IMG/VR virus record: IMGVR_UViG_3300044796_000657
Location: 186,001-250,000 of that record
DNA length: 64,000 bases
Strand: one strand, 5' to 3'
Shown here: one piece after another, positions 697-57,667 of the stretch
Numbering within the stretch: position 1 is the stretch's first letter
Layout of the letters: each line of letters begins with the position of its first letter
Translations under genes and position numbers: made by a program
Notes under the pieces: generated by a model
Database searches by the model: none
Told to the model about the DNA's origin: nothing
What the model saw: only the letters and a program-made list of their open reading frames with translations

Positions 697-1467
697 ATGG
701 AATATTCGGTAACTTATAAAAAGCTTCAACCTCCCGTGGACATCATTATTCCATTCCACGGACAATATGACCTATTGGGCCAATGCGTAGAATCAATAAT
801 CAAACAAACCTTTGGTCAAATTTATAGCTTAACTCTCGTGGACGACTACTCCGACAATAAAGACTTCTTTACAGACCTTAAAGAACGAAAACTCAAAAAT
901 ACACCCATTCAATTCCTACGACACGATGAACAAAAAGGATTTGGTGCCGCACTCAAAACAGGATTTGACAACACACAAAACGCTTGGGTTTGCTTCCTGC
1001 ACGCCGACTGCAAAATCGTTCGCTCAGATTGGCTCAGCGAACTTATGATAACAATGCAAAGTACCAAAAAAGATGGCGTCAAATTAGTTTCAGCCAAATT
1101 GTCCAATGGCGGTACCGGTGCTTTTGATGCCAATGTCATAGGTAATGTGGACAATAGGCCAGATGTCATTGTTGAAAGTCCTCTTCCAATAGTCTGCACA
1201 CTTGTTAATAGAGAACTTTTCAGTCGCATTGGTGGATTCATCAAGCCGTATCCATATTTCGGATATGAAGACGAGGAATTATTTTGGCGAATGAAGATCA
1301 AAAAATTCAAACAAGCAGTGAGTGGAAAATCTTTTGTAGAACATGCAGGCGGCATTACTGCTCAACAACTCATGAAAGATCACAAAATAGCTGAGACAGT
1401 TAATCTCAATAAAGAAAAATTCAAGACGGACATTGTTAAGTTTGCCAAAGAAAACAATTATAAATGA
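697..1467 (+). CDS. GT2 family glycosyltransferase
   Basis: DIIIP, LVDDYS, GFGAAL..G, FLHAD (DxD-like), GGF, YEDEEL motifs. Confidence 0.85.
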   Translation: MEYSVTYKKLQPPVDIIIPFHGQYDLLGQCVESIIKQTFGQIYSLTLVDDYSDNKDFFTDLKERKLKNTPIQFLRHDEQKGFGAALKTGFDNTQNAWVCFLHADCKIVRSDWLSELMITMQSTKKDGVKLVSAKLSNGGTGAFDANVIGNVDNRPDVIVESPLPIVCTLVNRELFSRIGGFIKPYPYFGYEDEELFWRMKIKKFKQAVSGKSFVEHAGGITAQQLMKDHKIAETVNLNKEKFKTDIVKFAKENNYK

Positions 1468-2354
1468 AAAAAATAGGCTTCATTGTCAGTGTTTACAACA
1501 AGATTGATGACTTGGCTGCACACTTGGAAATTTTCAAGTACTGCCCATTTGATCATGAAGTCATTGTTGTGTATATGATGGACTTGCCATCGGAATATCA
1601 AAAATTAGTAGATCAATTTCATGCTGTCAGAATTGAAGGTGTTGGGCATTATATAGGGCCATTATTAAGTGCCGTAGCCGGTGTCAGAAAAGCCAACGAA
1701 CTCGGATTGGATTATGTCGTTTACCGAAATGCGGATGACTGGCTGTTTAACTACGGATGGGAAAAACAAAACTTTGATACGATGGCCAAGAAACCTTATA
1801 TTTGTGGTGGATACAACTGGATGAATGTCGGTAGCAATCAAGACGTCACCTTAAATCAAGTGTATTTTGATGTACCAAAATTCATGACCACTGCCGATGA
1901 TGCCGAGAAATACTTCTTGAGATCAAGTCGTGGTTTCTTGTGCGAATTCAAAATGGCTAGATGGGTCAGAAAAACATGTCAAGATATGAATGTGGATTTT
2001 TATCGCCTCAAAGGACGAGAACAATATCCCGGTATAGGTTGGGAAAGCAAAGATATAGTTAAAGCTTACGGACAACAGGTACCAATTGGGTTCTGGGAAA
2101 AACTTAACAAAAACAACAGATATTTCAATGAAGAATGGCAACTCATTGGATCTCACGACAATGCATCAAGATTGGAGTATTGGAAGAGGATAAGAAAGTC
2201 AGTACCATATTTCCAAGAACTTGAAAAGGAGCATCACTTCGCAAGATTCTTAGAAACAGCCAAAGTGAATGAAAAGTGGAACGTAACTGTTAAATCAGAA
2301 CCATTGGCAACAAGTGCCAAAAAACCATCTATTTTCAAACGCAAAATATTCTAA
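1464..2354 (+). CDS. putative glycosyltransferase (GT-A-like)
   Basis: IGFIVSVYN N-terminal strand, NADDW DxD-like motif; ATGA-type overlap with GT2 gene. Confidence 0.55.
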   Translation: MKKIGFIVSVYNKIDDLAAHLEIFKYCPFDHEVIVVYMMDLPSEYQKLVDQFHAVRIEGVGHYIGPLLSAVAGVRKANELGLDYVVYRNADDWLFNYGWEKQNFDTMAKKPYICGGYNWMNVGSNQDVTLNQVYFDVPKFMTTADDAEKYFLRSSRGFLCEFKMARWVRKTCQDMNVDFYRLKGREQYPGIGWESKDIVKAYGQQVPIGFWEKLNKNNRYFNEEWQLIGSHDNASRLEYWKRIRKSVPYFQELEKEHHFARFLETAKVNEKWNVTVKSEPLATSAKKPSIFKRKIF

Positions 2355-3055
2355 TGTTGCTTCCTTATAACAAAAACAAACTGTGGTTTACAATAGTTGG
2401 TACAGGACGATGTGGAACCGTGTATTTCGCTAAACTCCTGACAGCAATAGGATTGCCGTGTGGTCATGAAAGAATGTTTGGACCTGAGGGGCTAGAACAT
2501 GCTTTGAAATTTAACACAAACAATAGCGATGTATCACAACACTCTGGTCTCGTCAATAAGGGAAATTACTTTGTAGCCGAATCATCATATATGGCAGTTC
2601 CTTATTTGGAGCATAGTATTCTTAATGATACGACGGTTATTCACGCAATTAGAAACCCTATCAAAGTCATTTTATCGTTTCATAATAAATTACAATATTG
2701 GCACTCTGCACACTTGAATCGTTGGGAAACCTTCATCCAAAACTTTGTTGATGTCGGCAATGGCAGTCCATTAGATAAATGTTGTAAATATGTTGTTGAT
2801 TGGAATAAAAACATAGAGCTTTGTCAAAAAAAACGATACCTGCGAATTAAACTAGAAGATGGCACCGAACCACTTTTGAATTTTTTGAAATACAAAAAGC
2901 CAATCAATTTGCCACCAAGCAACACATTTGAAGAGTGGGAACATCGCAAGCCACCACTCGCCCAACCAGCAAATGCCGAAGATGTAATGAATAGTCGCTA
3001 TGGTAACGATGTCAAAAAACTAATGTTAGATTATGGGTACGAACATGAAGTATGA
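2354..3055 (+). CDS. sulfotransferase-family protein
   Basis: IVGTGRCGT 5'-PSB loop, HE, HAIRNP..VI.S 3'-PB motif. Confidence 0.75.
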   Translation: MLLPYNKNKLWFTIVGTGRCGTVYFAKLLTAIGLPCGHERMFGPEGLEHALKFNTNNSDVSQHSGLVNKGNYFVAESSYMAVPYLEHSILNDTTVIHAIRNPIKVILSFHNKLQYWHSAHLNRWETFIQNFVDVGNGSPLDKCCKYVVDWNKNIELCQKKRYLRIKLEDGTEPLLNFLKYKKPINLPPSNTFEEWEHRKPPLAQPANAEDVMNSRYGNDVKKLMLDYGYEHEV

Positions 3056-4121
3056 TTTTTTGATTGTTGGTTCGGGAATCTTCGGAGCGGTCTTTTCTCA
3101 GCAAGTTCGTGAAAAAGGATACACCGCTCTTATCATCGAAAAGTCTGCACACATAGCGGGAAATTGTTACACCAAGAAGGTTGAAGGCATTGACGTTCAT
3201 GTTCATGGGCCTCATATCTTCAATACTAATAGCGAAAGAATATGGGACTATGCCAACAAGTTCTCAAAATTCAAACAATATACACACAGAGTAAAAGCTA
3301 ATTACGAAGGGCATCTTTACTCCATTCCCATTAATATGATGACCCTTCATCAAATTTACGGCGTCACGACCCCCGCCGAGGGTGCCGAAGTCCTGAATAA
3401 AGTTAAAATTCCAATTAACAATCCAACCAACCTTGAAGATTGGTGTTTGTCACAGATTGGCAAAGAACTGTACGAATTACTTATTAAAGGTTATACCCAA
3501 AAACAGTGGGGTAGAAATTGTCGTGATCTACCAACAGGTATCATTCGCCGATTGCCAATCAGATTAACTTATGATGACAAGTACCATGAATCGCTTTATA
3601 CAGGTCAACCGGAAAATGGATATACAGAATGGATTCAGAATATCATTGGCGATTGTCCTGTCGAAATAGGCACAGATTTTTTTAAGTTAAATTGGGCAAA
3701 ATACGCATCTAAGTTGGTTTACAGTGGCCCCATTGACGAATTTTACGATTACCACTTTGGAAAACTCGAATATCGCACTTTGAGATTTGAAGAAAAGGTA
3801 CTCAATGGTGATTATCAAGGCATGGCTCAAATGAACTACACAAACGTCGAAGTGCCATATACTCGCATTACTGAACATAAGCATTTCAATTTTAAGAACC
3901 AACCAAAAACAGTGGTGACGTTTGAATACCCCTCTGAGTGGCAACAAGGCTCTCAGCCATATTACCCAATAGGTGATGAAAAAAACAATGCCGTCTATGC
4001 GAAATATCATTCGCTGATTGACCACAAAACCATTATAGGCGGAAGGCTTGGATCGTATCGCTATATGGATATGGATGCCGTTATAGCATCAGCGATAAAA
4101 AAATCCGAAGAATTTAGTTGA
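3045..4121 (+). CDS. glf: UDP-galactopyranose mutase
   Basis: IVGSGIFG FAD motif, GPHIFNT, YTQKQWG, YTRITEHKHF, PYYP, GRLGSYRYMDMD. Confidence 0.95.
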   Translation: MKYDFLIVGSGIFGAVFSQQVREKGYTALIIEKSAHIAGNCYTKKVEGIDVHVHGPHIFNTNSERIWDYANKFSKFKQYTHRVKANYEGHLYSIPINMMTLHQIYGVTTPAEGAEVLNKVKIPINNPTNLEDWCLSQIGKELYELLIKGYTQKQWGRNCRDLPTGIIRRLPIRLTYDDKYHESLYTGQPENGYTEWIQNIIGDCPVEIGTDFFKLNWAKYASKLVYSGPIDEFYDYHFGKLEYRTLRFEEKVLNGDYQGMAQMNYTNVEVPYTRITEHKHFNFKNQPKTVVTFEYPSEWQQGSQPYYPIGDEKNNAVYAKYHSLIDHKTIIGGRLGSYRYMDMDAVIASAIKKSEEFS

Positions 4122-4146
4122 CGTTTCCGATTTGAGGCTATATCAT
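4118..4146 (+). promoter_or_regulatory. sigma70-type promoter
   Basis: TTGACG-17 nt-TATCAT upstream of the 4219 gene. Confidence 0.6.
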
Positions 4147-4218
4147 CTACTTCGTTGGCAAGATTGCCGACTGCGACCGGTCGAGGATACCGGCGAAATT
4201 TCTTCAAGGAGAGACAGA

Positions 4219-4545
4219 ATGAAACGCTTTTTCACGTTGGCATTGGTGGCTTTCGCCGCAATCGTCGGGGCATCGGACGCCAAGGCTTTCGGCCTTCGGG
4301 GCAAGTGTAGCGGCAGCAAGTGCGGCACGACCTGTAGCAAGCCCGCAACCACCTGTAGCAGCGCCAGCGGTTGTTCCAGTGGTGTTCAAGTCGCCTCGTA
4401 CACGACCGCTTCCTACACAACTTCCGCCCCGACCGCCATGCCCACGGCAAGCACGACCAACCTGCAGCCCAACACCGTGTACATCACGGACGCCAACGGC
4501 AAGCTCATGATCGCCCCGGCGAACATGCAAAAAACCACCAAGTAA
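4219..4545 (+). CDS. secreted Cys/Ser/Thr-rich small protein
   Basis: AAGGAG SD, Sec signal peptide ending A-K-A, Cys-rich low-complexity region, GC-rich codon usage. Confidence 0.75.
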   Translation: MKRFFTLALVAFAAIVGASDAKAFGLRGKCSGSKCGTTCSKPATTCSSASGCSSGVQVASYTTASYTTSAPTAMPTASTTNLQPNTVYITDANGKLMIAPANMQKTTK

Positions 4546-4566
4546 CCCTCGGTGGCTTCCAATGAC

Positions 4567-4593
4567 AAAACGGCCCGGAAATCCGGGCCGTTT
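4567..4593. terminator. Bidirectional terminator
   Basis: AAAA-CGGCCCGGA-AA-TCCGGGCCG-TTT between convergent genes. Confidence 0.8.
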
Positions 4594-4597
4594 CTAT

Positions 4598-7570
4598 TTA
4601 ATGAGTAACAGAAACACGGAACTTCAAAATCTCTTGTCCACACTTCAATCGCACATGATGATCGCCAACCTTGGTAGCCTTGAACCGGAAAGAGTCAAAA
4701 TCCGTTTGTGAGGAACCAAAGAAGTCTACCCCGGTATCAAACTCCCCTATCGTCCAACGACTTATCAATCGTGTATCATCACCGGCGTACCTTATCTTCG
4801 GCCTAACTCTTGCTTGGAATTCACACCCCAATTTAACATCCACTACGCTATCGTTGTCAACATCAAAGCATTTATTGTTCATTTTGATGGGAATAAGCGT
4901 AGCCGTTTCCACAGCAGGCAACTTCACGTAAATGTACAGACGACGACGAACCCGATGGGTGTTGTCCTCCATCCCATTATCGCTAGGCACATGGATCTTA
5001 TTATAGGTTTCGTACAATAAGGTGGCTACTTGAATAGCCGGTGATGCCGTCACCTGTGATATTTGCTTCAGGGTTTCGGTCAAATCGCCATTAAAAGTTG
5101 CTGCCAACGGCTTGAAGAACATACAACCTTTAAGGTGTGTCGGTTGATCTTTAACAAACCACGGCCTCATACGATCAAGACACGGTGAATCCTTCAGCTT
5201 CCGCCACAACTCCAAAGGTATAGAGTTTTCTACCAATCTCAACGACCAGTCATTAGGCCAATTCTTGTCAACGGGTGGCCCCTTAATGTAGAGTGTTGAA
5301 GTTTCATCAAGAACTATACACTCTTCATGCTTCCAAGTAGGAAGGAATTCATACTTACTACCCGCCGCTTCATGCCGTACGATGGAAGAAACCAATCTCT
5401 GCGGTGAGATAGGTTGATAAATCGGCTCTACGGTTTCACCCTTCTTGACATGCAACATGATGACTTTGGTGCCACCGCTACATGTGATTTGTATAGCGCC
5501 AGCCGGATATGTTCCCGGTTCATCTGGCAACTCACCCATCTTAATCTTGAAACGAGCTTCTTGACGATATTTAACTGTTGACAATTGCCAAATCTTATTA
5601 ACGTCCAAGATCGGCTTGATTTCACCAACCTGCAAGGGCGTAATAGTCCATAATTCCCCGGCAACTTTCTCTTTAACAGCGCCTTCAAAGGCATCAGCCG
5701 GTTCCGACAAGCGGATAATAACATTTTGCTCAGGCAAGATAGTCACATCTTGCATGTGAATTGGATTGTACAAAATTACGTCTTCACTACTCGCCACTGT
5801 CGTAGTCATCGGGGTGGAAGGGGATGAAGTTCCCGAAGCTTTTGTATGGAATAATGGGCGGGTAACACTCGTTGTTGCAGACTTTTTTTTAGACATATCA
5901 ATGCCATAGTAGTCGTGATCATAGTTGTAAATGCTCACCGCTTTATGCAACTTAACTTCCGACAACTTCTTTGTAAAAGCGTGGCCTTCCAATGTCGCCA
6001 AAGGAATTTCTTCGATGACGACCTTGGACTTTTTGGGCATACTGTAATAACCGATGCCTTGCTTCCAATGATTGCCGCCATGCGAAGACGAAGCAGTAGT
6101 CGCACCAGAATAAACCGAATAGGTGGACGTAGAGGAGGTAGAGGTTGAAATTGGCTTCAAGTACTCTACTTCTTTTGTGAACCAAAAGGCAATACGTCTT
6201 TGACTCTGCTCTAAATTCTTTTTAGGTGGATACGTAAGACGATACGAACCAATCGCCCTTTGAGCAGCATCCAAACTTAAGTTTGCAGTGATGCTGAACC
6301 TTTGGAAGAGGTGACCGTGCTTGGTAATCGGTGTGAGAGTACCGACATTAAGATATTTATCTTGAATGTGTCCGGCATCATAAACGATTTCCCAACGAGC
6401 ATCTTCCGGCTCATCGGGCCAATAGACATGGGGAACCGCTATCTCAAAAGTGTGATTGTTGAGACCGTTGTGAAAATCAATGCTTTCATGTAAAGCAGGG
6501 TTCGTCATCGAACTCTTAGCATTATCTTTAAAGCGTTCCAATGCTTTGTTGCGCAACGCCACCGGATCAGACAATTCCATTACCGGCTCCTCAATGATGT
6601 TGTCACGCTTGCCATGAAGTGACAGCATAACAATCATCGGGCGAGTAATCAACTGGTTACCACGCCGACCCGTAAATATCATACGTGAAATGGCATAAGT
6701 GCCACTCTTGATACCTTGCGCAGTTCTTTGACTTGCCTTAGAAAATGAAAACCAAAAATGATGCTCACGAACCGGAGTCGGCTTCGGGCGAATTTCGGCC
6801 CTTATTTCTTCGGATAGGTTGAAGTTAAGTGGCGGATTATGACGACGCAAAATTGTTTGCCCGCCAATAACACCACCATCACTTTGATCCTTATCAATCC
6901 AATAGTGTCCCGCTTGAACAAGGAAGACACCTTTCCCGTCAATCTCATGATCTTCCATGACCACGCTCCACTGATCGGGCGATTCAGTTACGCCTTCAGG
7001 AGCAGGTTCCCAATCTTCACAAAACACAACTTCCAATGTGCGGTGAGGCTCAATTTTGATAACATTGGTATTGGGGTTGATGACAGTTAATACGTCTGGC
7101 CGGGCTGTGCTTCTGCCCGGTGGCGTAGTATACAACATGACCGCTCCACCCGACAACGAGCAGATGGCTTTTTGAGGATGTTCATTCCCTTTTAATTCGT
7201 AATGGATTTCACCCAAACATATTTCTGAAACACTAATCCATGATTCAATATCATAGATTTGGGCAAATTCATAAACTTCTTGATTTTTCTTATTAAAAGA
7301 TTTCCCAATTAGTGTTAAGTATGGCGAAGTGGTGGTGAAATCCCAATACGCACCTTCGCTAACATTGCTGGCACTTCTGGGGTTATCCAGAACAATGCGC
7401 AATCCTTGGCGTGGAAAAAGACGTACAGTATGCGCAACCCCCGGATTCACGACCCGTTGAGGATTCGCCGTCTTCTTCTTGGCGGATTTCTTTTTCCGAA
7501 TTTTCATTGGCATCGCTGTCGCCGTTAAGAGTGCGAGGTTAAATAGAAATTCAAAAGTTTTGTCTGTCAT
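4598..7570 (-). CDS. large multi-domain protein with repeated Ig/chagasin-like beta-sandwich units
   Basis: Recurring hhNP..x..h.h.P...h.h.h units; C-terminal VDVKLG.EF...W...FRFKATKVG..HVRL pattern; ATGA overlap fixes start at 7570. Confidence 0.6.
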   Translation of the reverse strand: MTDKTFEFLFNLALLTATAMPMKIRKKKSAKKKTANPQRVVNPGVAHTVRLFPRQGLRIVLDNPRSASNVSEGAYWDFTTTSPYLTLIGKSFNKKNQEVYEFAQIYDIESWISVSEICLGEIHYELKGNEHPQKAICSLSGGAVMLYTTPPGRSTARPDVLTVINPNTNVIKIEPHRTLEVVFCEDWEPAPEGVTESPDQWSVVMEDHEIDGKGVFLVQAGHYWIDKDQSDGGVIGGQTILRRHNPPLNFNLSEEIRAEIRPKPTPVREHHFWFSFSKASQRTAQGIKSGTYAISRMIFTGRRGNQLITRPMIVMLSLHGKRDNIIEEPVMELSDPVALRNKALERFKDNAKSSMTNPALHESIDFHNGLNNHTFEIAVPHVYWPDEPEDARWEIVYDAGHIQDKYLNVGTLTPITKHGHLFQRFSITANLSLDAAQRAIGSYRLTYPPKKNLEQSQRRIAFWFTKEVEYLKPISTSTSSTSTYSVYSGATTASSSHGGNHWKQGIGYYSMPKKSKVVIEEIPLATLEGHAFTKKLSEVKLHKAVSIYNYDHDYYGIDMSKKKSATTSVTRPLFHTKASGTSSPSTPMTTTVASSEDVILYNPIHMQDVTILPEQNVIIRLSEPADAFEGAVKEKVAGELWTITPLQVGEIKPILDVNKIWQLSTVKYRQEARFKIKMGELPDEPGTYPAGAIQITCSGGTKVIMLHVKKGETVEPIYQPISPQRLVSSIVRHEAAGSKYEFLPTWKHEECIVLDETSTLYIKGPPVDKNWPNDWSLRLVENSIPLELWRKLKDSPCLDRMRPWFVKDQPTHLKGCMFFKPLAATFNGDLTETLKQISQVTASPAIQVATLLYETYNKIHVPSDNGMEDNTHRVRRRLYIYVKLPAVETATLIPIKMNNKCFDVDNDSVVDVKLGCEFQARVRPKIRYAGDDTRLISRWTIGEFDTGVDFFGSSQTDFDSFRFKATKVGDHHVRLKCGQEILKFRVSVTH

Positions 7571-8700
7571 GACAAAACCCAAGAACTATCCCCTTTTGTC
7601 AGATAAAAGAAGGGACGACGTTTATCAATCTCAAATCTTCTTTCAAAGTATTCATTTGTTTGATTTGTGTGTACGAGACGAGCCGATAGGTTGTCCGTTA
7701 TCACAATCGGGTGGTACTGATTTTTAGAAAGACGAATGACAAAACCGTCAATGCTCGATGAACAAATCATCGTGTCGCCAACCGGATTCATCAAAATCGG
7801 TCGTCTCGGATCTTTTTCCACCATCGGAATCGTTACGATTTGCTCTGTCGTCTTTTTCTTAGACTTCGTTTTGATGATAATATCTTCAGCCGCTACAGGT
7901 GGCTTTGAGCAATTCAAAAGATGGCAAGATTTCCCAAAATCTGCTCTCTTGTCTTGAATAAGTTTAACACAAGTGTTGTGTACCGGCGGTTTGATAATGA
8001 CTTCCGTACGATCAGTTTCCGTCACTAAGCAGAGCTGCTGCTTGGCAAGCATCGGAATGAAAGTATGTTTGAGCGTAGGCTTAACCGTCAATAATGGCGG
8101 TGATGGCCAATGCAAAGGATGTGTTGGGTGATGAATACAAACAGTAATCAAATCACCCTGTTTGTACATGCTGCCTTTGTGCTTGATAGTCTTAGGCAGA
8201 CAATAAAACTGGATGTAGCACGCAATAGGTTTGGCCGATGGCGATAACTGAATCCGGTGACAAGAGGTAATACGTTGGAATTTTTTGCCGCTAGGATGTC
8301 TTTCGGTTTTAATTAATTCGCAAGTGGCAATTTCTTGACTTGCGAACGGCAACCAAACTTCGTCAGCAATTGGCTCTTGCCCATTGATGAGTACTTGCGA
8401 CTCCATAATGAGGTTAAAGCAATTTGGTTCAAAGTAAAGGGATTCATCAGGGGTGGTATAGAAAACGTTCGGCCAACTCTCAAACTTGTCTTCTGTACGG
8501 ACGACTCTCTTGAGCGGCGAAACTCGTACGTTGGCCATTAGATCGCAATCCATTTCATGGATTTCAACCTTAGATCGAGATGCCTTTTTAAGTGCCTCAT
8601 CGCCTACGACAACGCTACTGTAGCCATTGTGGTGATGATGAGCCATACCGTAGAATGGTGCACTTGCTCGTGCCACTGCCGTTATCATAAGACACTCCAT
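7567..8700 (-). CDS. hypothetical protein, partly similar to downstream large protein
   Basis: TAATG overlap at 8700; shares SKV.I.E and ILMNP-type segments with 4598-7570. Confidence 0.6.
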   Translation of the reverse strand: MECLMITAVARASAPFYGMAHHHHNGYSSVVVGDEALKKASRSKVEIHEMDCDLMANVRVSPLKRVVRTEDKFESWPNVFYTTPDESLYFEPNCFNLIMESQVLINGQEPIADEVWLPFASQEIATCELIKTERHPSGKKFQRITSCHRIQLSPSAKPIACYIQFYCLPKTIKHKGSMYKQGDLITVCIHHPTHPLHWPSPPLLTVKPTLKHTFIPMLAKQQLCLVTETDRTEVIIKPPVHNTCVKLIQDKRADFGKSCHLLNCSKPPVAAEDIIIKTKSKKKTTEQIVTIPMVEKDPRRPILMNPVGDTMICSSSIDGFVIRLSKNQYHPIVITDNLSARLVHTNQTNEYFERRFEIDKRRPFFYLTKGDSSWVLS

Positions 8701-9320
8701 TAATTTGCGACTTCGACTGCCATATCGTTGACGATCTTGGCCAGCCAATCAGCATAATTCTTTTGTTCGATAGCGCCTTTGATATTTTTCCAATAAACGA
8801 ACACTCGTTCGTATTTTTCCCGCAAGTAGTCTTCTACGTCTTTGATCGCAGCAAGCTTGTCAGTTAATGGCGTTTCATCGGAAACCGCCCGATAAACCGT
8901 ATCTTGCATGCGAAACGGCATAAAATGAGCAATCCACGAATCATAGTTGGTAATAAAAATTTCCCAAGCTACCAATATCGCATCTTGACTCGTAACTGCA
9001 TGGTAAAGACCTGCGTGCTTCTTAGACCATTCAATCAAGCCGGGTTCGTACCCTTCCCACTCCCACGTATACTCCTGAATCATCTTACTCTGCTGAGAGA
9101 AATGATTCATATCCGAAGTAGCGTAAAGTGAGGGATTGGCACTAACCACAAAATTGTATTTGGTTGGATGTTGCCCATCTACAATGGAAGCAACGTTAAC
9201 GTGCAGCCAACCCCATTCCGACTTGCCCTTTGCACGCAAAATCAAATTGGCTCTGTCTACGTATTGAACGAGAGGTGCCTTAACCTTTTTCCGCTTCCAA
9301 TATTCTTCGTGTAAGTTCAT
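8700..9320 (-). CDS. hypothetical protein
   Basis: 206-aa ORF translationally coupled on both sides. Confidence 0.65.
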   Translation of the reverse strand: MNLHEEYWKRKKVKAPLVQYVDRANLILRAKGKSEWGWLHVNVASIVDGQHPTKYNFVVSANPSLYATSDMNHFSQQSKMIQEYTWEWEGYEPGLIEWSKKHAGLYHAVTSQDAILVAWEIFITNYDSWIAHFMPFRMQDTVYRAVSDETPLTDKLAAIKDVEDYLREKYERVFVYWKNIKGAIEQKNYADWLAKIVNDMAVEVAN

Positions 9321-9548: not shown

Positions 9549-9773
9549 TCAATTCCTAGATGGATTGGTGTACGTCATGAGCATTGGCTCTACCTTGACT
9601 ACCTTGTTCTGTTGAGCAGTCCAGAGAGCAAAATCTCCATACATCAGGCCATCGTAATAACCGTTCTTTAGAAAATTATCAAAAAGGCTATTCTTTTTCT
9701 TTTTGGGATAAGTCAATTCAATGACTTCAGCCTCACAGCAAGGCGAAGAGTTCATGGGATTCATATGACTCAC
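9549..9773 (-). CDS. hypothetical protein
   Basis: Fills gap in operon; start uncertain. Confidence 0.45.
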   Translation of the reverse strand: MSHMNPMNSSPCCEAEVIELTYPKKKKNSLFDNFLKNGYYDGLMYGDFALWTAQQNKVVKVEPMLMTYTNPSRN

Positions 9774-10254
9774 GAATAAGGGTTTCTGATTTAGTTAAAA
9801 TTTGACTGAGGCGACTTTTGCCCCACTTACCGGCTTGTAAGATTTCCGATATTTCATCTAAAGTGTACCCATCACGATAATACAGTACGAAAACCTTGCG
9901 AGCGAAATCGTCTAATGGACTCGTAATGGTATCATAAAACACTTCGCAATTACGAGAAGTGATTGCTTTGTCATGATTTTCATTAAGCTCTACGACGGTC
10001 AAACGACTGTGGATTTTTCCCCATCGTAAGTCCCTGTCTAGGTCTGCCATTTCGCCGACGATACATCGTGATGCGTACGTCTCAAAAGATTTGCCTTGAT
10101 CTTGATATCGATTAGCCGCTTGGACTAAACCCAAGTTACCTGCGGCCTTCAATTCATCACGATCCATATTGTTGAATGGGGGTCTCCGAATATTCGCATG
10201 AAGAACAGTGGAGACTAAATTTAAATGCTTGAGTACTAATTCGTTTGGTTGCAT
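9733..10254 (-). CDS. sigma70-family RNA polymerase sigma factor (regions 2+4, FliA/SigF-like)
   Basis: DELKAAGNLGLVQAANRY...SFETYA..CI.G region 2; VFVLYY.DGYTLDEIS...SRLSQI region 4 HTH. Confidence 0.85.
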   Translation of the reverse strand: MQPNELVLKHLNLVSTVLHANIRRPPFNNMDRDELKAAGNLGLVQAANRYQDQGKSFETYASRCIVGEMADLDRDLRWGKIHSRLTVVELNENHDKAITSRNCEVFYDTITSPLDDFARKVFVLYYRDGYTLDEISEILQAGKWGKSRLSQILTKSETLIRESYESHELFALL

Positions 10255-10308: not shown

Positions 10309-11385
10309 TTAGTAATCGTTATCTTCGTACGCTGACCAATAATCACTCTTAACTGGCGTAGTTCGCTTTTTGAGTGATCGCTTCTTTTTCAGCGACTCTT
10401 TGAGCTTCTCTACGTCTTCTTTGAGCTTGGACTTCGTTTCTTCCACCCTGTCTTCGGGGCAAGGCGGGATAAGAAACGAAAGCATCTTTTCCGTTTCAGT
10501 TCTCAATACCTTGTTCGTACCATACTTAATGATACGCTCTAGGAACCAAGTTTTGGTTTCGTAAAGACCTTTACTGAGTATGAAGAACGGTTCTTCATTA
10601 TGAAGTCCTAAGCCAGTTAACATCTCTTTGAGATTTTGGTAAGGAGTTATGTTGCCGGGGAAAGGCATGGTGCGACAAGTATTCGCAAAGTGAATAAACA
10701 TGCGTGCCCAATTCTTAATTTCCTTGGAATCCAAAGTGCCTTCTGGCAATCGCAATTCAACCGTTTTCTTAGAGGCACCACTGTGTACATAGTTGCCCAT
10801 GTTCAGTGATACCCGACGTTCGCTGTTTTCAAGCGATAGCGGTCTGACTTTACTCCAGAATGTATCAACGTTTTTTGCCTGCACAGCCGATACAGGCTTG
10901 AGATCATTCAACAGGCGACAGTAAACGTTATTACGGCGACCCTTGGGCAAAATCTCAATCAGCAGCCTCTCCATCTTCATCCAGTTGGCCATCAAAGTTG
11001 CGGCCTGCGAAGTATTGAAGTCGGCGATTTCAACGTGGATGTGATAGCCACAGTTATCATTAACTTGTGCGCCATTCTTTTTGAGAGTATCGCCCATGTT
11101 AGCCAACTTAATCAAATCGGCGGCACCGGACGCTTTATAGGAAGCGACTTCCCAACCGCCTTCTTGTGGCTTCGTACCACAACTGCGGTCAAACTTTACG
11201 TGCCAATAATCATTGCCAGAATCTTGCTGGTAATGATTCGTACCCATGACATGATGCTTGGAGTCCGTCAATCGGACGACCTGTACAAGTTCGTCAAGGG
11301 TTTTGCTTTTGATCACCTCAAGCTCAATACCAAAGCATCGCTTCGTGTTGAACTTGACATACTGGACAGGAAGCATTTCAGGCAT
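10309..11385 (-). CDS. amidoligase family protein (COOH-NH2 ligase type 2)
   Basis: FGIELE, W..K.D.S, WEVAS, CGYHIHV, TVELR motifs. Confidence 0.85.
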   Translation of the reverse strand: MPEMLPVQYVKFNTKRCFGIELEVIKSKTLDELVQVVRLTDSKHHVMGTNHYQQDSGNDYWHVKFDRSCGTKPQEGGWEVASYKASGAADLIKLANMGDTLKKNGAQVNDNCGYHIHVEIADFNTSQAATLMANWMKMERLLIEILPKGRRNNVYCRLLNDLKPVSAVQAKNVDTFWSKVRPLSLENSERRVSLNMGNYVHSGASKKTVELRLPEGTLDSKEIKNWARMFIHFANTCRTMPFPGNITPYQNLKEMLTGLGLHNEEPFFILSKGLYETKTWFLERIIKYGTNKVLRTETEKMLSFLIPPCPEDRVEETKSKLKEDVEKLKESLKKKRSLKKRTTPVKSDYWSAYEDNDY

Positions 11386-35714: not shown

Positions 35715-36230
35715 TCACCGCCGCACAAGACCGCTATAAGTATCGTAGTACTGTGCACCTTCTGAGTACGCTATTTCTAATTCATTGATGACTTCTTGGT
35801 AATAAACGCCATCCCGATAACCACTCAGATACAAATGACGCAAAGTTGCCATGTTTGGATAGTGATTTGGGAACAAGAGATAGCGGTTATCTTTCTTGCT
35901 ATTGGCAAATCCATCCACAAAACCATCAACCCACTGAACCGTTGTTTGTAGCTCTTTGGCAATTTGATAGTTAATGTAATCTTCTATCTTTTGCCCTAAG
36001 ATGATGGTTTCAAGTGGATGACAAATCTTCTCTTTTCCTACTGGCGAATAACATCCTGCTTTAGCCTGTAGCTTCATGAACTTGCTGATGCTATAGCCGT
36101 GACTCATGGCCATATCAACACTGTGGTCAAGTTTGTCTTTGAGGACTTTTTTCATCTTTTTTTTCACAAGAATACCCTTATCGCCACATGGAAACAAAGT
36201 AACACTTACCGTCTCGCTCACCGACGACAA
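35715..36230 (-). CDS. hypothetical protein
   Basis: Open frame; true start probably downstream (~36155). Confidence 0.5.
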   Translation of the reverse strand: MSSVSETVSVTLFPCGDKGILVKKKMKKVLKDKLDHSVDMAMSHGYSISKFMKLQAKAGCYSPVGKEKICHPLETIILGQKIEDYINYQIAKELQTTVQWVDGFVDGFANSKKDNRYLLFPNHYPNMATLRHLYLSGYRDGVYYQEVINELEIAYSEGAQYYDTYSGLVRR

Positions 36231-50283: not shown

Positions 50284-52785
50284 ATGACAAGACAACAATT
50301 ATTCGATTTGTGCCTCGATGGCCTCAAACAAAGAAACATTACAACCGATGATTATAAAAATAGGTTCTCTGCCGAATGGAAAGAAATCACATCAATGGGC
50401 GAAGACAAATACTTCGCTGAGTTAATAGAAAACAAAACCAAGTTCAAGGAAAATGAAAACAACCTCATCATACCATATCTCTTGGGAATAGTTAACGATT
50501 TCGACATAGACAAACAAGCCAAATTCATCTACGGTGAATGGCCAGATATTGATATTGACTATATTGACGGTGTTCGTGAATACCTCAAAGAAGATTATGC
50601 TAAGAAAGCGTTCGGTGAACAATACGTTTGCAACATTGCCAACTACAACACGTTCGGCATGAAATCAGCCCTGAAAGACATGGCAAGATTATTCAGTCTA
50701 CCTCACGAAGAGGTTGATGCCGTAACGAAAAACATGAAGGATAAGGATGAAGACGGCAAAATATTAACGTGGGATCAAGCTGTCGAAATCTACGACGAGT
50801 TTCGTGAGTATTGCGAAAAGAATCCAGAAGTCGCCGAAGCCGCCAAACAGCTAGTCGGTCGTATTCGTGGTCAAGGCCAACACGCTTCCGGACTGGTTGT
50901 TTCCCGTGTTCCAATTCACGAACATATTCCATTGATTCGTGGTAAAGAAGGTTCGGTAGCAGCAGCTTGGCCAGAAGGACAAAGTAGCAGCGATTTGAGC
51001 ATCGTGGGTTTCATTAAGTTCGACTTCTTGGGACTAGATGGTAATCAAAAGATCGCAAGTGCTTGTAAGATGGCCTGCTTGGAAAAAGAAGAGTACGAAA
51101 AGTGGCAAGACAAAGAAAGTGATCTATACCAAACGTCTACCAAAGTTCTCAGTGCTGTACAAGGCGTGACTGTATGTGCTCTTCCCGGTGAAAATCAACC
51201 TTCGTGGTCCGACACTTCTTATCTTGAAGACAAGAAGTGCTTGGAAATGGCTAACCGTGGAGACCTAAGAATGGTATTCCAATTCGACGGTTCTGCGGGC
51301 ATTCGTAATATGGCGAAAGAGGGTGGCGTTGACAAGTTCGATGACCTTGTAGCTTATACCTCTCTATTCCGTCCCGGCCCTATGAAACTCGGTGCCCACG
51401 AACAATACATTAAACGTAAAAGAGGAACAGAGGAATGGTCAGTGCATCCGCTACTGGCAGAAGGCCCGGCCAATCTTCAATCCACGTATGGTGTACACGT
51501 ATACCAAGAGCAAATCTCACGGGTTCTCCACACGGTAGGTAAGATTCCACTCGGCGACTGTGAAACTGTACGTAAGGCTATCTCAAAGAAGAAAATTGAG
51601 AAGTTCCAAAAATACAAGGATATGTTCATTGCCAATGGACAAATCACCTTGGGGGCGACGATTGAAGAACTGGAACACTTGTGGGCACTCCTAGAGGCGT
51701 TCGCTGGTTACGGTTTCAATCAATCACACGCAGTAGGTTATTGTTACATATCTTCAAGAATGCTTTGGCTCAAATGCCATTTGCCGAAACAATTCTTTGC
51801 TTCGATGTTAACTCACACCAAAACCAGCAGTCAAAAAGACTATGACAAACTGAAAGAATACAAACGGGAATCAGAACGCAACAAGGTCAAAATAGAAAGA
51901 CTCCACCTCAACAAGTCCAAAAACGAATTCGTCGCAGATGACAAGTACGTCTATTGGGGATTCTGCAAGATCAAGGGTATTGGTGAAGATGCCGCCAAGA
52001 GAATTGAAGAACTTCAACCATTCGCTGGTATTGAAGACTTCCTTACACGATACGGTACAGATGCCAAAGTTGTTCAACCGCTCATTGCTTTGGGATGTTT
52101 CCAAGAAGCCGATCCATTAACTTTGGCAACCTTCTATGAAGCATACAAAGATTACGACAAAAAAGAAAATGACCGAAACAAACGCTTCCTGAAAAACAAG
52201 GAAAAACTTGAAGCCGAAATTACAGAAGCAACTGATGCCGACAAAATCAAACTAGAAAAGAAACTCGCAACCTGTATTGCCAACAAGTATAAAAAAGACG
52301 ACTTTGCGGAACGTCCAACATTGACCAACTTTAATCACGACTTCAAGATTAAAGCCGACTTCCTTGAAATACTCAAAGACAAAACAGGGGAAGCCGCTGA
52401 AGTTGCTTATTACGGTTTTGTTTGGCAGCACCCGATTGAAAAACTGACTAACTATCAAGGTTTGACCATTGCCCAATTCATCGAAGAAGGCGAAAAGCAC
52501 GGACAGATCGAAGTCCTGCTGAAAGAAGTCAAACAAGTACAAGGCCCGAAAGCAACATACTACAGCGTCCAATTTGAAGATTCAGCATACATGAAACGGA
52601 AGATGACGTTATGGCAAAACGACTACGAAAGGTTCAAGGATGAATTTGTGGTCGGCAACTATGTTAGATTGCATGTAGACGCCCCAAAGCCTCCATATCC
52701 AACCTACGGACTTCACCAATTCCCCGGCGGAAAATGGAAAATGCCTAAAAAAGAAAGCGATTATCGAGTCGTTAGCTTGACCTAA
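50284..52785 (+). CDS. dnaE: DNA polymerase III alpha subunit lacking PHP domain
   Basis: PDIDID, HASG, KFDFLGL, VFQF, RPGP, YQEQ, YGFN.SHA, IKGIG, C-terminal OB. Confidence 0.92.
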   Translation: MTRQQLFDLCLDGLKQRNITTDDYKNRFSAEWKEITSMGEDKYFAELIENKTKFKENENNLIIPYLLGIVNDFDIDKQAKFIYGEWPDIDIDYIDGVREYLKEDYAKKAFGEQYVCNIANYNTFGMKSALKDMARLFSLPHEEVDAVTKNMKDKDEDGKILTWDQAVEIYDEFREYCEKNPEVAEAAKQLVGRIRGQGQHASGLVVSRVPIHEHIPLIRGKEGSVAAAWPEGQSSSDLSIVGFIKFDFLGLDGNQKIASACKMACLEKEEYEKWQDKESDLYQTSTKVLSAVQGVTVCALPGENQPSWSDTSYLEDKKCLEMANRGDLRMVFQFDGSAGIRNMAKEGGVDKFDDLVAYTSLFRPGPMKLGAHEQYIKRKRGTEEWSVHPLLAEGPANLQSTYGVHVYQEQISRVLHTVGKIPLGDCETVRKAISKKKIEKFQKYKDMFIANGQITLGATIEELEHLWALLEAFAGYGFNQSHAVGYCYISSRMLWLKCHLPKQFFASMLTHTKTSSQKDYDKLKEYKRESERNKVKIERLHLNKSKNEFVADDKYVYWGFCKIKGIGEDAAKRIEELQPFAGIEDFLTRYGTDAKVVQPLIALGCFQEADPLTLATFYEAYKDYDKKENDRNKRFLKNKEKLEAEITEATDADKIKLEKKLATCIANKYKKDDFAERPTLTNFNHDFKIKADFLEILKDKTGEAAEVAYYGFVWQHPIEKLTNYQGLTIAQFIEEGEKHGQIEVLLKEVKQVQGPKATYYSVQFEDSAYMKRKMTLWQNDYERFKDEFVVGNYVRLHVDAPKPPYPTYGLHQFPGGKWKMPKKESDYRVVSLT

Positions 52786-55127: not shown

Positions 55128-55157
55128 AAAAAAGCCAAGCAATGCTTGGCTTTTTTT
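55128..55157. terminator. Bidirectional terminator
   Basis: A6-GCCAAGC-AAT-GCTTGGC-T7. Confidence 0.85.
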
Positions 55158-55644
55158 ATTTATCGGACATCATGCCGGAACCTGCCCCGTATTCATTCAC
55201 TTTTTTTTTAGCAGTAAAATCAGCCAATTGTTTTTTCGCAAATTCTACAACATCACTAACATGATTACACGCAGCAATTGCTGTAGGGGAATTTCTTTTT
55301 TTAGCAGCTTCTTTTTGTATTTTTTGTAATTCCTGTTTAGAAGTTTCAACTTTCTTTTTAGCTTCTTCAAATTTCTTTTGCTGGAACTCTGCTTCTTTTT
55401 TCTTCATTTCGTCTGGCGTTAACTGAATTTCATTAACGACATAGAAACCTTCACGGGGATATTTGGCCGGTGAATAATAGCCATCATGCCTAATGTTTTG
55501 CAAAGAACAAACCTTAATGTTCCTGTCTTCCAATTTGGCATTCTTGCGGGCATTAATGTACCCCTGACTGTAAGCCTCTGCTTCAGCATAAAAAACAAAA
55601 GGCCCACCCAAATAAACGTATCGTAATTGCTTTGGCACGATCAT
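55156..55644 (-). CDS. hypothetical coiled-coil protein
   Basis: 162-aa ORF downstream of ncRNA cluster. Confidence 0.55.
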   Translation of the reverse strand: MIVPKQLRYVYLGGPFVFYAEAEAYSQGYINARKNAKLEDRNIKVCSLQNIRHDGYYSPAKYPREGFYVVNEIQLTPDEMKKKEAEFQQKKFEEAKKKVETSKQELQKIQKEAAKKRNSPTAIAACNHVSDVVEFAKKQLADFTAKKKVNEYGAGSGMMSDK

Positions 55645-56053: not shown

Positions 56054-57667
56054 TTACTCTTCATCACCTTCATCTTCAATAGAAGATTTTCGCAGGTGTT
56101 TACCGTCTAAATCAATCTTCACAATCTCGCCCACAACATGGTCGGCATCCATATTGCCATCAACGAATTGCTTAACCAACTTGAAGACGTTGTCACTAAA
56201 CCCGCCAAGGTTCAGAACATCCTTCATTTCCTGTACTTGCGTAGTGGCGTACGGTGCTACGTCGATACAAACCAACTTCGCCTTCGGATTACGCTGCTTC
56301 CAACGCTTCCATTCGGCTTGGAATTGACTCTCACCCTTCAATCTCTTACCGTACCGATCCGTATTCAACGATTCACACCAAGATTGATTGTCCGATACGC
56401 AGATCAGCAAATCGCCAACCCTGTTCGCATCGTTCAACAACTTAAGTGGCGCCCAACAAGCCGTACCACCATCCGCAATCTTACCGATTGCCGACGCATT
56501 CGCCATCACAGATTGCTCCGGATCGACATTGAATGGTACAACATGCTTTTGGAAGAACATCATTTCAGCGTTCGGATTGTTTCTCTTGAAACAAGACGCA
56601 ATCAGCGCAGCCACATCCACACAACGAGTTACCGTTGAAGCCGATCCACGACCGCCCGTCACTGGGTACGTCATGGACTTGGAAACATCGGTAAAGACGT
56701 ACGCAGGAACGCTATCCTTGTAATGCGTCTCAAACGACGGAATGTTGCGAGTAGCAATCTCCATCGCCCGTTCCAAACCATCCCGCAACTCGACAGGCAC
56801 ACCAACGGTATTTTGGTACGCCGTCATAATCTGATACGGAAATACGGAAGCCTTTTTGATCGACACAGGATCAGCCAAGCGGTTTGCAAGCAATTCAACC
56901 ATCCCCGGCACGTTAAACACACCTTGTCGTTGAAGAGTTGCCAGATTACGGAGCAACCAGAACCAGCTCGCCTTTTGAGCGATTTCGGCCCATTGATCGG
57001 TGCCTAACTTTTTGGCAGTATACATACGGAAATCCGTCTTCGGCATTTCCTTAGTTTCGCCCTTCTTCCACGCTTCGTAAACCTTAACCGATTCCGGCAA
57101 CGCATCATGGTTAAATGGTCGGTCAACCATCATACCATAAAGGGCGGAACGAGTCTTATCCAATGGGCGTGGGTGAATGTTCTTCAAGATCGTCTTGAGA
57201 GAAGGCGTACCGACGCTCTGTTGCCAGATTTCCGTAGGCGTACGGCTATTCAACCAATTAACCATTAACTCTTTTGGAACGGTTCCAAAAGACTTACGAC
57301 CGGTCTTGCCAGATCGAATGATTTGGTAGAAATTGCGGAACATCGTGCCATCGTTAATGACACGTACGAAAGTCTTACGAAGCAGCTTCGTTTCCTTGCG
57401 TGCAGCTAATACAGCGCATAACAAGGCCGGAACATCCTTCATAAAGTACAATTCACGGCTGAACACGGCACACTGCGCCACGAATTCAGGCTCCACAATC
57501 ATTGCGGCATTTTGAATTTGATCTAGCTGTTTCTTGGCACTCACGTAAAGCGTGTTGCCGAGACATGAAGTCGTGCTGAGTAAAGCAAGGGTTTGCTTGG
57601 GCGTTAATTGATACGCTACACCACCAGCCTCATTGAAAGAATCCAAAGAACTAAATAACTTATTCAT
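56054..57667 (-). CDS. Ro60/TROVE domain RNA-binding protein (Rsr)
   Basis: NEAGG.AY, MKDVPALL, GRKSFG, HPRP, LRNL.T..R.GV, FPYQ...AY, vWA DVS.SM..PVTG.RGS, GGT, VSDNQSW, GGFSD.VF. Confidence 0.95.
   Translation of the reverse strand: MNKLFSSLDSFNEAGGVAYQLTPKQTLALLSTTSCLGNTLYVSAKKQLDQIQNAAMIVEPEFVAQCAVFSRELYFMKDVPALLCAVLAARKETKLLRKTFVRVINDGTMFRNFYQIIRSGKTGRKSFGTVPKELMVNWLNSRTPTEIWQQSVGTPSLKTILKNIHPRPLDKTRSALYGMMVDRPFNHDALPESVKVYEAWKKGETKEMPKTDFRMYTAKKLGTDQWAEIAQKASWFWLLRNLATLQRQGVFNVPGMVELLANRLADPVSIKKASVFPYQIMTAYQNTVGVPVELRDGLERAMEIATRNIPSFETHYKDSVPAYVFTDVSKSMTYPVTGGRGSASTVTRCVDVAALIASCFKRNNPNAEMMFFQKHVVPFNVDPEQSVMANASAIGKIADGGTACWAPLKLLNDANRVGDLLICVSDNQSWCESLNTDRYGKRLKGESQFQAEWKRWKQRNPKAKLVCIDVAPYATTQVQEMKDVLNLGGFSDNVFKLVKQFVDGNMDADHVVGEIVKIDLDGKHLRKSSIEDEGDEE

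What the first reader, a model, noticed from the sequence alone, without database searches (positions are those of the whole stretch)
5787..5890. Probable -1 frameshift (A AAA AAG) or homopolymer switch inside the ~990-aa ORF
Seen: in-frame TCT AAA AAA AAG (A8G, 5890-5882). After it the zero frame reads as S/T-rich off-frame-like text (SATTSVTRPLFHTKASGTSSPSTP). The -1 frame gives 31 natural-looking residues VCNNECYPPIIPYKSFGNFIPFHPDDYDSGE then TAG (5789-5787). An in-frame ATG at 5809 overlaps this end and could start a separate 403-aa protein. Established: A AAA AAG is the classic bacterial -1 slippery site (dnaX, IS elements). Inference: long fusion plus short isoform, or two genes fused or unfused by A-tract length.
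Basis: partly seen in the sequence, partly recalled or inferred. Interest (0 to 1): 0.6.

Follow-up and report, generated by a model that had tools for sequence, protein, structure and literature searches.

The report
Conserved poly-A slippage site in phage gene
A run of eight A's inside a 990-residue gene of a huge phage is kept at the same place in distant relatives, together with an open -1 frame behind it, so it most likely lets the phage make a full-length and a shortened form of this protein from one gene.

Summary
TCT AAA AAA AAG lies in frame at 5890-5882 (minus strand). The -1 frame then runs 31 codons to TAG at 5789-5787.

The 994-codon ORF is one real gene. The probable start is ATG 7570, giving 990 aa. 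About 14 homologues of 940-1036 aa, 21-35% identical, span both halves in a single ORF. The S/T-rich zero-frame text is a genuine variable linker, not off-frame noise.

All 12 family members with DNA carry their only A-run of 8 or more (A8-A10) at this exact site.
- Lys codons at the site are AAA in 32 of 34, against 31-73% AAA elsewhere in the same genes (P about 6e-11).
- Flanking non-Lys codons supply A's where the residues differ (A-K-K-N, Q-K-K-T).
- The -1 frame stays open 20-48 codons in all 12: codon-shuffle P = 4e-9, synonymous randomisation P = 7e-8. The +1 frame shows no such signal.

One relative appears split at an A11 run; this is inferred from protein sequences only.

Best reading: a conserved slippage site giving a long form and a short form of about 593 aa.
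- Ribosomal -1 shift, RNA-polymerase slippage and DNA-level slippage cannot be told apart here.
- No stimulatory RNA structure was found.
- No reads cover the site in RNA.
- ATG 5809 is not a conserved start.

This is a new member of a known kind.

The parts
4598..7570 (-). One gene for a 990-aa protein. The ORF is open from TTG 7582 (994 codons); the likely start is ATG 7570, as in the IMG gene call.
   Evidence: Full-length homologues of 940-1036 aa align over residues 17-992 in one stretch.
5882..5890 (-). A8G run, codons AAA AAA AAG (K564-K566). The in-phase heptamer A AAA AAG is 5888-5882. This is the conserved slippage site.
   Evidence: It is the only A-run of 8 or more in the gene, at the homologous codon in 12 of 12 relatives with DNA. 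K566 is invariant in 14 full-length homologues. KK or KKK is aligned there in about 36 of 40 long family members.
5787..5882 (-). -1 frame tail: 31 codons (5882-5790) ending in an acidic/aromatic motif, then TAG 5789-5787. This would be the C-terminus of the short isoform (about 593 aa from ATG 7570).
   Evidence: Stops are depleted in the -1 frame in 12 genes: P=3.7e-9 and 6.6e-8. D/E/Y/W/F are enriched at the tail ends, P=2e-5, a feature chosen post hoc.
5783..5881 (-). Zero-frame S/T-rich interdomain linker (residues 567-599) that overlaps the -1 tail.
   Evidence: variable in length and sequence in all homologues, and followed by the conserved I-L-Y-N-P domain start. Codon-usage frame scoring is ambiguous here.
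5891..7570 (-). N-terminal part shared by both forms: an array of beta-sandwich (Ig-like) domains (residues about 26-470), a first S/T linker (6023-6094), and a poorly modelled segment (residues about 521-563).
   Evidence: Model m55212fba4bbe, pLDDT 82. Foldseek matches only tandem Ig-like, cadherin or BACON-like arrays. An own-genome paralogue matches residues 164-558.
4598..5782 (-). C-terminal part present only in the long form: a further beta-sandwich array (residues about 600-994) plus the stop codon.
   Evidence: Model mc6ced4f1f29b, pLDDT 87. Foldseek matches tandem Ig-like arrays. Conserved in 20 relatives.
5807..5809 (-). Not supported.
   Evidence: Met is not conserved in the alignment. 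The upstream sequence is C-rich with no SD-like core. No zero-frame start is conserved near the -1 stop in 12 genes.

Best explanation
The A-run is a conserved, selected slippage site at a domain boundary of a large Ig-like multidomain protein of a clade of huge phages. Standard decoding of the window's gene gives the 990-aa protein. A one-base backward slip moves a fraction of ribosomes into the -1 frame. That slip can be ribosomal, on A AAA AAG, or it can come from RNA polymerase adding one A to the run. These ribosomes stop after 31 more codons. The product is a form of about 593 aa that has the N-terminal domains, lacks the four or so C-terminal beta-sandwich domains, and ends in a short acidic/aromatic tail. 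Shown: the run is conserved as nucleotides rather than as amino acids, the -1 frame behind it is specifically kept open, and the fused long ORF is the ancestral arrangement. Inferred: a shift actually happens, at which level (ribosome, RNA polymerase or DNA), in what proportion, and what the two forms do. By analogy with phage structural proteins, they may be two length variants of a surface or assembly protein.
For: Twelve of 12 genes with DNA carry exactly one A-run of 8 or more, at the homologous codon: A8 once, A9 six times, A10 five times. These proteins are 21-35% identical and the genes have 32-50% GC. At the site 32 of 34 Lys codons are AAA, against 31-73% AAA elsewhere in the same genes (P about 6e-11). 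Other KKK tripeptides in these genes are always mixed AAA/AAG. Where the residues differ, the run is kept: GCA AAA AAA AAC and CAA AAA AAA ACG. The -1 frame is open for 20-48 codons in all 12, against a median of 4-18 at other positions. About 39 stops would be expected at gene-wide rates and none is seen. Codon-shuffle Fisher P is 3.7e-9 for -1 and 0.14 for +1. Synonymous randomisation that keeps the zero-frame peptide gives P=6.6e-8. The -1 stop falls 3-12 codons before the conserved C-domain start in every gene. KK or KKK sits at this boundary in about 36 of 40 long family members. About 13 N-only ORFs end 3-65 residues after a KKK. P0020 and P0083 come from contigs of the same length and fit overlapping ORFs around an A11 run. 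From the literature: A AAA AAG is highly shift-prone in E. coli dnaX, runs of 9 A/T give efficient RNA-polymerase slippage, and AAA AAA AAA is about 50-fold under-represented in E. coli genes (PMC5009743).
Against: There is no direct evidence of a shifted product or of heterogeneous mRNA. The only RNA run has a contig gap over 5570-6023. No downstream stem-loop is conserved or unusually stable (z from -2 to +2) and there is no conserved upstream SD-like element. The window's run is only A8, below the A9 at which bacterial RNA-polymerase slippage is reported as efficient. The -1 tails are not alignable across the family, and the acidic/aromatic feature was chosen after looking. In the inferred split relative the corresponding tail is only three residues, so a long tail is not universal. 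The 12 genes were chosen as full-length hits, which biases towards in-frame arrangements. Codon-usage scoring cannot tell the frames apart in the linker.
Confidence: 0.68

Rival explanations
1. DNA-level homopolymer switch (contingency locus). Replication slippage changes the run length in the phage population, toggling between a fused 990-aa gene and a split gene. The split gene would give a short N-terminal protein with the same -1 tail. Heritable variants, not recoding, would produce the two forms.
For: One relative is inferred to carry A11 with the N and C parts in different frames (P0020/P0083). About 13 N-only ORFs end soon after a KKK. Run length differs among lineages, from A8 to A10. 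A one-A insertion in DNA gives the same -1 tail, so the stop depletion fits this reading equally well.
Against: All 12 genes with DNA, and about 36 of 40 long homologues, are in frame. Logan's contig of the probable source run shows A8 with no variant at depth 17, although contigs hide minor variants. The +1 frame, reached by single-A deletions, shows no selection. The split case could be a homopolymer assembly error, and its DNA could not be fetched.
Confidence: 0.17
2. The run is a translational feature without a functional shifted product. It would be a conserved Lys-Lys-Lys protein motif, or a poly-A ribosome pause at the domain boundary that aids folding of the N-terminal part. Any slippage would be noise.
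For: K566 is invariant and KKK is nearly universal at the protein level. No frameshift stimulators were found. Ribosome sliding and pausing on A-runs is documented (PMC5009743).
Against: A protein motif does not explain exclusive AAA usage or the A's contributed by non-Lys codons. A pause-only role does not explain the -1-specific depletion of stops at synonymous sites of the zero frame. If slippage were only noise, one would expect selection for early stops instead.
Confidence: 0.1
3. Assembly artefact or two separate genes. The true run would be A9 or A7. A protein of about 597 aa would end at TAG 5787, and a 403-aa protein would start at ATG 5809.
For: The zero frame between the run and ATG 5809 is only 24 codons, so it could be open by chance. 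Codon-usage scoring is ambiguous there.
Against: Fourteen homologues of 940-1036 aa have both halves in one ORF. IMG called the same 990-aa protein. An independent assembly gives A8. M592 is not conserved and has no SD-like sequence.
Confidence: 0.03

Closest known systems
E. coli dnaX tau/gamma (-1 ribosomal frameshift at A AAA AAG)
   Same: The heptamer is identical and in the same phase. The long product comes from the zero frame and the short product from the -1 frame, and both share the N-terminal domains.
   Different: dnaX has an upstream SD-like element and a downstream stem-loop, and the -1 frame stops after one codon. Here no stimulator was found and the -1 frame is kept open for 20-48 codons. 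The protein is unrelated: an Ig-like array, not a clamp-loader subunit.
Thermus thermophilus dnaX (RNA-polymerase slippage on a run of 9 A)
   Same: A homopolymeric A-run of 9-10 sits inside a single long ORF in 11 of 12 relatives. The run is longer than a heptamer needs, which fits polymerase realignment. The short form comes from shifted transcripts (PMC5009743).
   Different: In Thermus both alternative frames stop nearby. Here only the -1 frame shows selection. The window's own run is A8. No transcript data exist.
Citrobacter rodentium tssM and Shigella spa33/mxiA (poly-A or poly-T transcriptional frameshifting giving length variants)
   Same: Two length variants of a structural protein arise from one gene through a homopolymer. 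Both split and fused arrangements occur among relatives (PMC4256274 title and abstract; PMC5009743).
   Different: Those are bacterial secretion-system genes. Slippage was shown by experiment there and is not shown here.
Phage structural genes with frameshift-dependent Ig-like extensions (lambda G/GT, T7 10A/10B, Listeria phages A118/PSA; Fraser et al. 2006 as cited in PMC5009743)
   Same: A phage protein built of Ig-like domains, with two forms that differ by C-terminal domains, and with in-frame and out-of-frame arrangements among relatives.
   Different: In those cases the shift adds the extension to a minority of molecules. Here the extension is in frame and the shift removes it. A virion location is not shown for this protein.

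Membership tests
-1 programmed ribosomal frameshift site (X XXY YYZ type) | Slippery heptamer in the phase of the zero frame | tested here: met
   A AAA AAG at 5888-5882 with zero-frame codons AAA AAG. All 12 relatives have an in-phase A AAA AAN.
-1 programmed ribosomal frameshift site (X XXY YYZ type) | Conservation of the shift site among homologues beyond what the protein sequence requires | tested here: met
   32 of 34 Lys codons at the site are AAA, P about 6e-11. The run is kept where the residues change.
-1 programmed ribosomal frameshift site (X XXY YYZ type) | -1 frame ORF maintained downstream | tested here: met
   Open for 20-48 codons in 12 of 12. P=3.7e-9 by codon shuffle and 6.6e-8 by synonymous randomisation. 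The +1 frame is not significant.
-1 programmed ribosomal frameshift site (X XXY YYZ type) | Stimulatory element: a 3' stem-loop or pseudoknot, or a 5' SD-like sequence | tested here: not met
   The 60 nt after the run fold no better than shuffles (z from -2.0 to +2.0), and no structure or upstream SD is shared in 12 genes. Some phage shifts work without stimulators (PMC5009743).
-1 programmed ribosomal frameshift site (X XXY YYZ type) | Trans-frame protein product observed | not testable with these tools
   No proteomic data are available.
Transcriptional slippage site | Homopolymer of about 9 or more A/T | tested here: inconclusive
   The window has A8. Relatives have A9 (6) and A10 (5), plus an inferred A11.
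Transcriptional slippage site | mRNA population heterogeneous in run length while the DNA is uniform | not testable with these tools
   The RNA run X2 has no contig over 5570-6023, and contigs cannot show minor variants.
Phase-variable homopolymer (DNA contingency locus) | Run-length polymorphism within or between closely related genomes, with in-frame and out-of-frame alleles | tested here: inconclusive
   One split arrangement was inferred from two protein sequences of a distant relative. The 90% cluster of the window's protein holds only itself and a fragment. The source contig shows A8 only.
Phage Ig-like domain proteins with frameshift-linked extensions | Ig-like beta-sandwich fold | tested here: met
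   AlphaFold models have pLDDT 82 and 87 and are all-beta. The best Foldseek matches are tandem Ig, cadherin or BACON arrays, with low overall TM (0.1-0.2) because domain orientations differ.
Phage Ig-like domain proteins with frameshift-linked extensions | The host protein is a virion structural protein | not tested
   No Pfam or PHROGs family matches. The neighbours are a sigma factor, two unknown ORFs and a glycan-synthesis cluster.

The most novel reading that the evidence does not exclude
The run is a dual-level switch peculiar to this clade of huge phages. Slippage sets the ratio of a long and a short surface protein within one infection. One-base changes of the run flip lineages between long-by-default and short-by-default arrangements. 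The short form's acidic Tyr-rich tail and the S/T-rich linkers would be substrates of the adjacent phage-encoded sulfotransferase and glycosyltransferase cluster. That would make this a recoded, post-translationally decorated phage adhesin.
Probability: 0.1. Interest if true: 0.8.

Novelty: new member of a known kind. Interest (0 to 1): 0.58.

Why it matters
Recoding sites are usually found one gene at a time, and few are known outside tail-chaperone, capsid, dnaX and IS genes. Here a slippery run is conserved across a whole uncharacterised protein family of huge environmental phages, in proteins only 21-35% identical. The overlapping frame shows measurable selection. This gives a clean, testable case of two proteins from one gene in phages that cannot yet be cultured. 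It also flags a family that automatic annotation will report sometimes as one gene and sometimes as two, and it marks the domain boundary at which the two forms differ.

Tried and rejected
- Family scans: Pfam and PHROGs scans of the protein and its two upstream neighbours found nothing.
- Word-based protein search: nothing found.
- More DNA of relatives: six scans for related loci all returned no confirmed relative. They covered viral contigs with P0001, A2, P0010 and P0008, metagenome contigs with A2 and P0026, and genome contigs with P0033. One alignment was too diverse to search with.
- Frame scoring: codon-usage scoring of the three frames is ambiguous in the linker.
- Stimulators: RNA folding downstream of the run found no conserved or unusually stable structure.
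- Re-initiation: no conserved start lies near the -1 stop.
- Reads: the DNA contig matches the window. The RNA contigs leave a gap over the site, so expression and run length in RNA remain unknown.
- ESM Atlas: only scores below 0.8 and TM below 0.35, so no lead.
- Other RNA: Rfam and tRNA scans of the window found nothing.
- Wasted call: one search was a useless translation.
Full report
**Setting.** The window is bases 186001-250000 of a 430-kb IMG/VR record labelled provirus, with CheckV completeness 97%. The record was cut from a 614-kb JGI contig of a peat metagenome. It carries a large terminase, a short DnaE, a Ro60/TROVE protein and a sigma-70-like factor. I treat it as a huge phage. 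Table 11 gives dense ORFs and no other code was used.

**Observation.** On the minus strand the sequence reads ATG TCT AAA AAA AAG TCT.
- The A8 run is 5890-5883 and the G is 5882.
- The three Lys codons are residues 564-566 of ORF 4598..7582.
- The heptamer A AAA AAG (5888-5882) is in the phase needed for a tandem -1 slip.
- From 5882 the -1 frame gives 31 codons and then TAG 5789-5787.
- The gene probably starts at ATG 7570, giving 990 aa. That is the form held by IMG and the ESM Atlas.

By itself this is unremarkable. The genome has 12 sense-strand A-runs of 8 or more in 431 long ORFs. In addition, 11% of positions in this gene have a -1 frame at least as long.

**One gene, not two.** Pfam, PHROGs and the word search were blank. 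The exhaustive HMMER search found 99 relatives. About 14 of them are 940-1036 aa and align to residues 17-992 in a single stretch at 21-35% identity.

In the alignment the stretch after K566 is a linker that varies in length and composition (S, T, G, N, K, E). It is followed in every sequence by a conserved domain start (I-L-Y-N-P-x-H). A second S/T linker lies at residues 497-520.

M592 (ATG 5809) is not conserved. It has a C-rich upstream sequence without an SD-like core, whereas 25% of ORF starts in this genome have one. No zero-frame start is conserved near the -1 stop.

A 459-aa paralogue elsewhere in the genome (G000:381744-383123) matches residues 164-558 (E 3e-6). It has no KKK at the aligned boundary and none of the 400-residue C-terminal half. 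In its sequence I saw no S/T-rich stretch, but I did not check this formally.

**The run is conserved as nucleotides.** DNA was obtained for 11 full-length relatives. Each gene has exactly one A-run of 8 or more, and it sits at the codon aligned with K564-566: A8 in the window, A9 in six, A10 in five.
- At the site 32 of 34 Lys codons are AAA. The two AAG are the last codon of the run.
- Elsewhere in the same genes AAA is 31-73% of Lys codons, which gives P about 6e-11.
- The other KKK tripeptides in these genes are always a mix of AAA and AAG.
- In two relatives the residues differ (A-K-K-N and Q-K-K-T), yet the neighbouring codons supply A's and the run stays at A9.
- An uncut alignment of all 40 family members of 700 aa or more places KK or KKK at this boundary in about 36.
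- According to the review PMC5009743, AAA AAA AAA is about 50-fold under-represented in E. coli genes. Keeping such a run therefore needs an explanation.

**The -1 frame is kept open.** Behind the run the -1 frame is open for 20-48 codons in all 12 genes. The median at other positions of the same genes is 4-18.
- At gene-wide rates about 39 stops would be expected in these twelve windows, and none occurs.
- Shuffling the linker's codons, which keeps composition, gives Fisher P = 3.7e-9 for the -1 frame and 0.14 for the +1 frame.
- Re-drawing synonymous codons while keeping the zero-frame peptide gives P = 6.6e-8.
- That randomisation over-predicts stops by only 11% elsewhere in the genes.
- The -1 stop always falls 3-12 codons before the conserved C-domain start.
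- In the nearer clade the tails end in acidic/aromatic motifs such as D-D-Y or E-E-Y-Y. Enrichment of D/E/Y/W/F in the last 12 residues has P = 2e-5, but I chose that feature after seeing the tails.

**Other arrangements.** About 13 more distant relatives are N-terminal-only ORFs of 480-606 aa that end 3-65 residues after a KKK.

Two hits come from Logan contigs of the same length, 51,743 bp. These are P0020 (522 aa, ending F-A-K-K-K-R-K-R) and P0083 (428 aa, starting M-F-L-Q-K-K-K-E-S-D-N). Their ends can be encoded by one nucleotide string read in two frames around an A11 run, with the C-terminal part in the +1 frame. This is my inference from the two protein sequences; the DNA could not be fetched. 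It means a split arrangement probably exists. It also means that in this lineage the tail after the run is only three residues, so a long tail is not universal.

**Mechanism.** Three routes give the same -1 tail:
- a ribosomal -1 slip on A AAA AAG;
- RNA-polymerase realignment that adds one A;
- a one-A insertion in DNA.

No downstream structure or upstream SD-like element is shared. That weakens a dnaX-type high-efficiency frameshift, although some phage shifts work without stimulators (PMC5009743). Runs of A9-A10 in most relatives are longer than a heptamer requires, and they match the length at which bacterial RNA polymerase slips efficiently (PMC5009743). That favours transcriptional slippage in those relatives. 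The window's A8G is the classical ribosomal site.

Logan's contig of the probable source run shows A8 at depth 17 with no variant. A peat metatranscriptome from another study holds 64% of the gene's words at 100% identity, but it has a gap over 5570-6023. Neither run length in RNA nor minor DNA variants could be seen.

**What the protein is.** AlphaFold models built on family alignments are all-beta. Residues 26-566 have pLDDT 82, with low confidence after about residue 475. Residues 596-994 have pLDDT 87.

Foldseek finds only tandem Ig-like, cadherin-like or BACON-like arrays in the PDB and in viral models. Overall TM scores are low, as expected for beads on a string.

The gene sits in a conserved block: amidoligase, sigma-70-like factor, a 203-aa ORF, a 390-aa ORF, then this gene. 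Next to it on the other strand lies a glycan cluster with UDP-galactopyranose mutase or RGP, GT2 and a sulfotransferase-like gene. Function is unknown. A surface or assembly protein in two lengths is an analogy, not a finding.

**Verdict.** The site is a new example of a known kind of recoding signal, in a previously undescribed family. Full-text searches for huge or jumbo phages together with slippage terms found nothing relevant. The level at which slippage acts, and the role of the two forms, remain open.

Noticed in passing
window 36157-36164 (ORF 35715-36230, minus) and 55201-55209 (ORF 55156-55644, minus): Two more sense-strand A-runs lie inside ORFs. One is GTG AAA AAA AAG, in phase at codon 22 of a 171-aa ORF. 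The other is A9 near the 3' end of a 162-aa ORF. They could be further slippage sites or chance.
   Followed up: no
window 697-4121 (plus strand) and the matching genes in L003-L013: A glycan-synthesis cluster is conserved beside the gene in the window and in most relatives. It includes a UDP-galactopyranose mutase at 3033-4121 and a sulfotransferase-like ORF at 2354-3055, with GT2 or RGP in relatives. The big protein has S/T-rich linkers, and its -1 tail has acidic Tyr motifs that resemble Tyr-sulfation sites. A link between the two is speculation.
   Followed up: partly
window 5891-5935 (minus), residues about 552-563: An acidic/aromatic motif (D-Y-Y-G) lies in the zero frame just upstream of the KKK in the window and in several relatives. 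It resembles the motif at the end of the -1 tails.
   Followed up: no
G000:C1:381744-383123 (L002:2745-4124): A 459-aa paralogue of residues 164-558 sits in the same genome. It has no KKK at the aligned boundary and lacks the C-terminal half.
   Followed up: partly
window 7567-9320 (minus): Two ORFs of unknown function (393 and 206 aa), with no family match, lie directly upstream. They are conserved in the same order, after a sigma-70-like gene (9733-10254) and an amidoligase (10309-11385), in nearly all relatives.
   Followed up: partly
window 56054-57667 (minus) and 50284-52785 (plus): The phage encodes a Ro60/TROVE-vWA protein and a shortened DNA polymerase III alpha (833 aa). Rfam found no Y RNA or any other family in the window.
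   Followed up: partly
window 4300-8900: A peat metatranscriptome from a different study holds most of this stretch at 100% identity. The phage therefore occurs in a second data set, either as RNA or as carried-over DNA.
   Followed up: partly
window 3500-5000: GC rises from about 0.38 to 0.50 across the convergent gene ends at 4122-4597, where only short ORFs are found.
   Followed up: no
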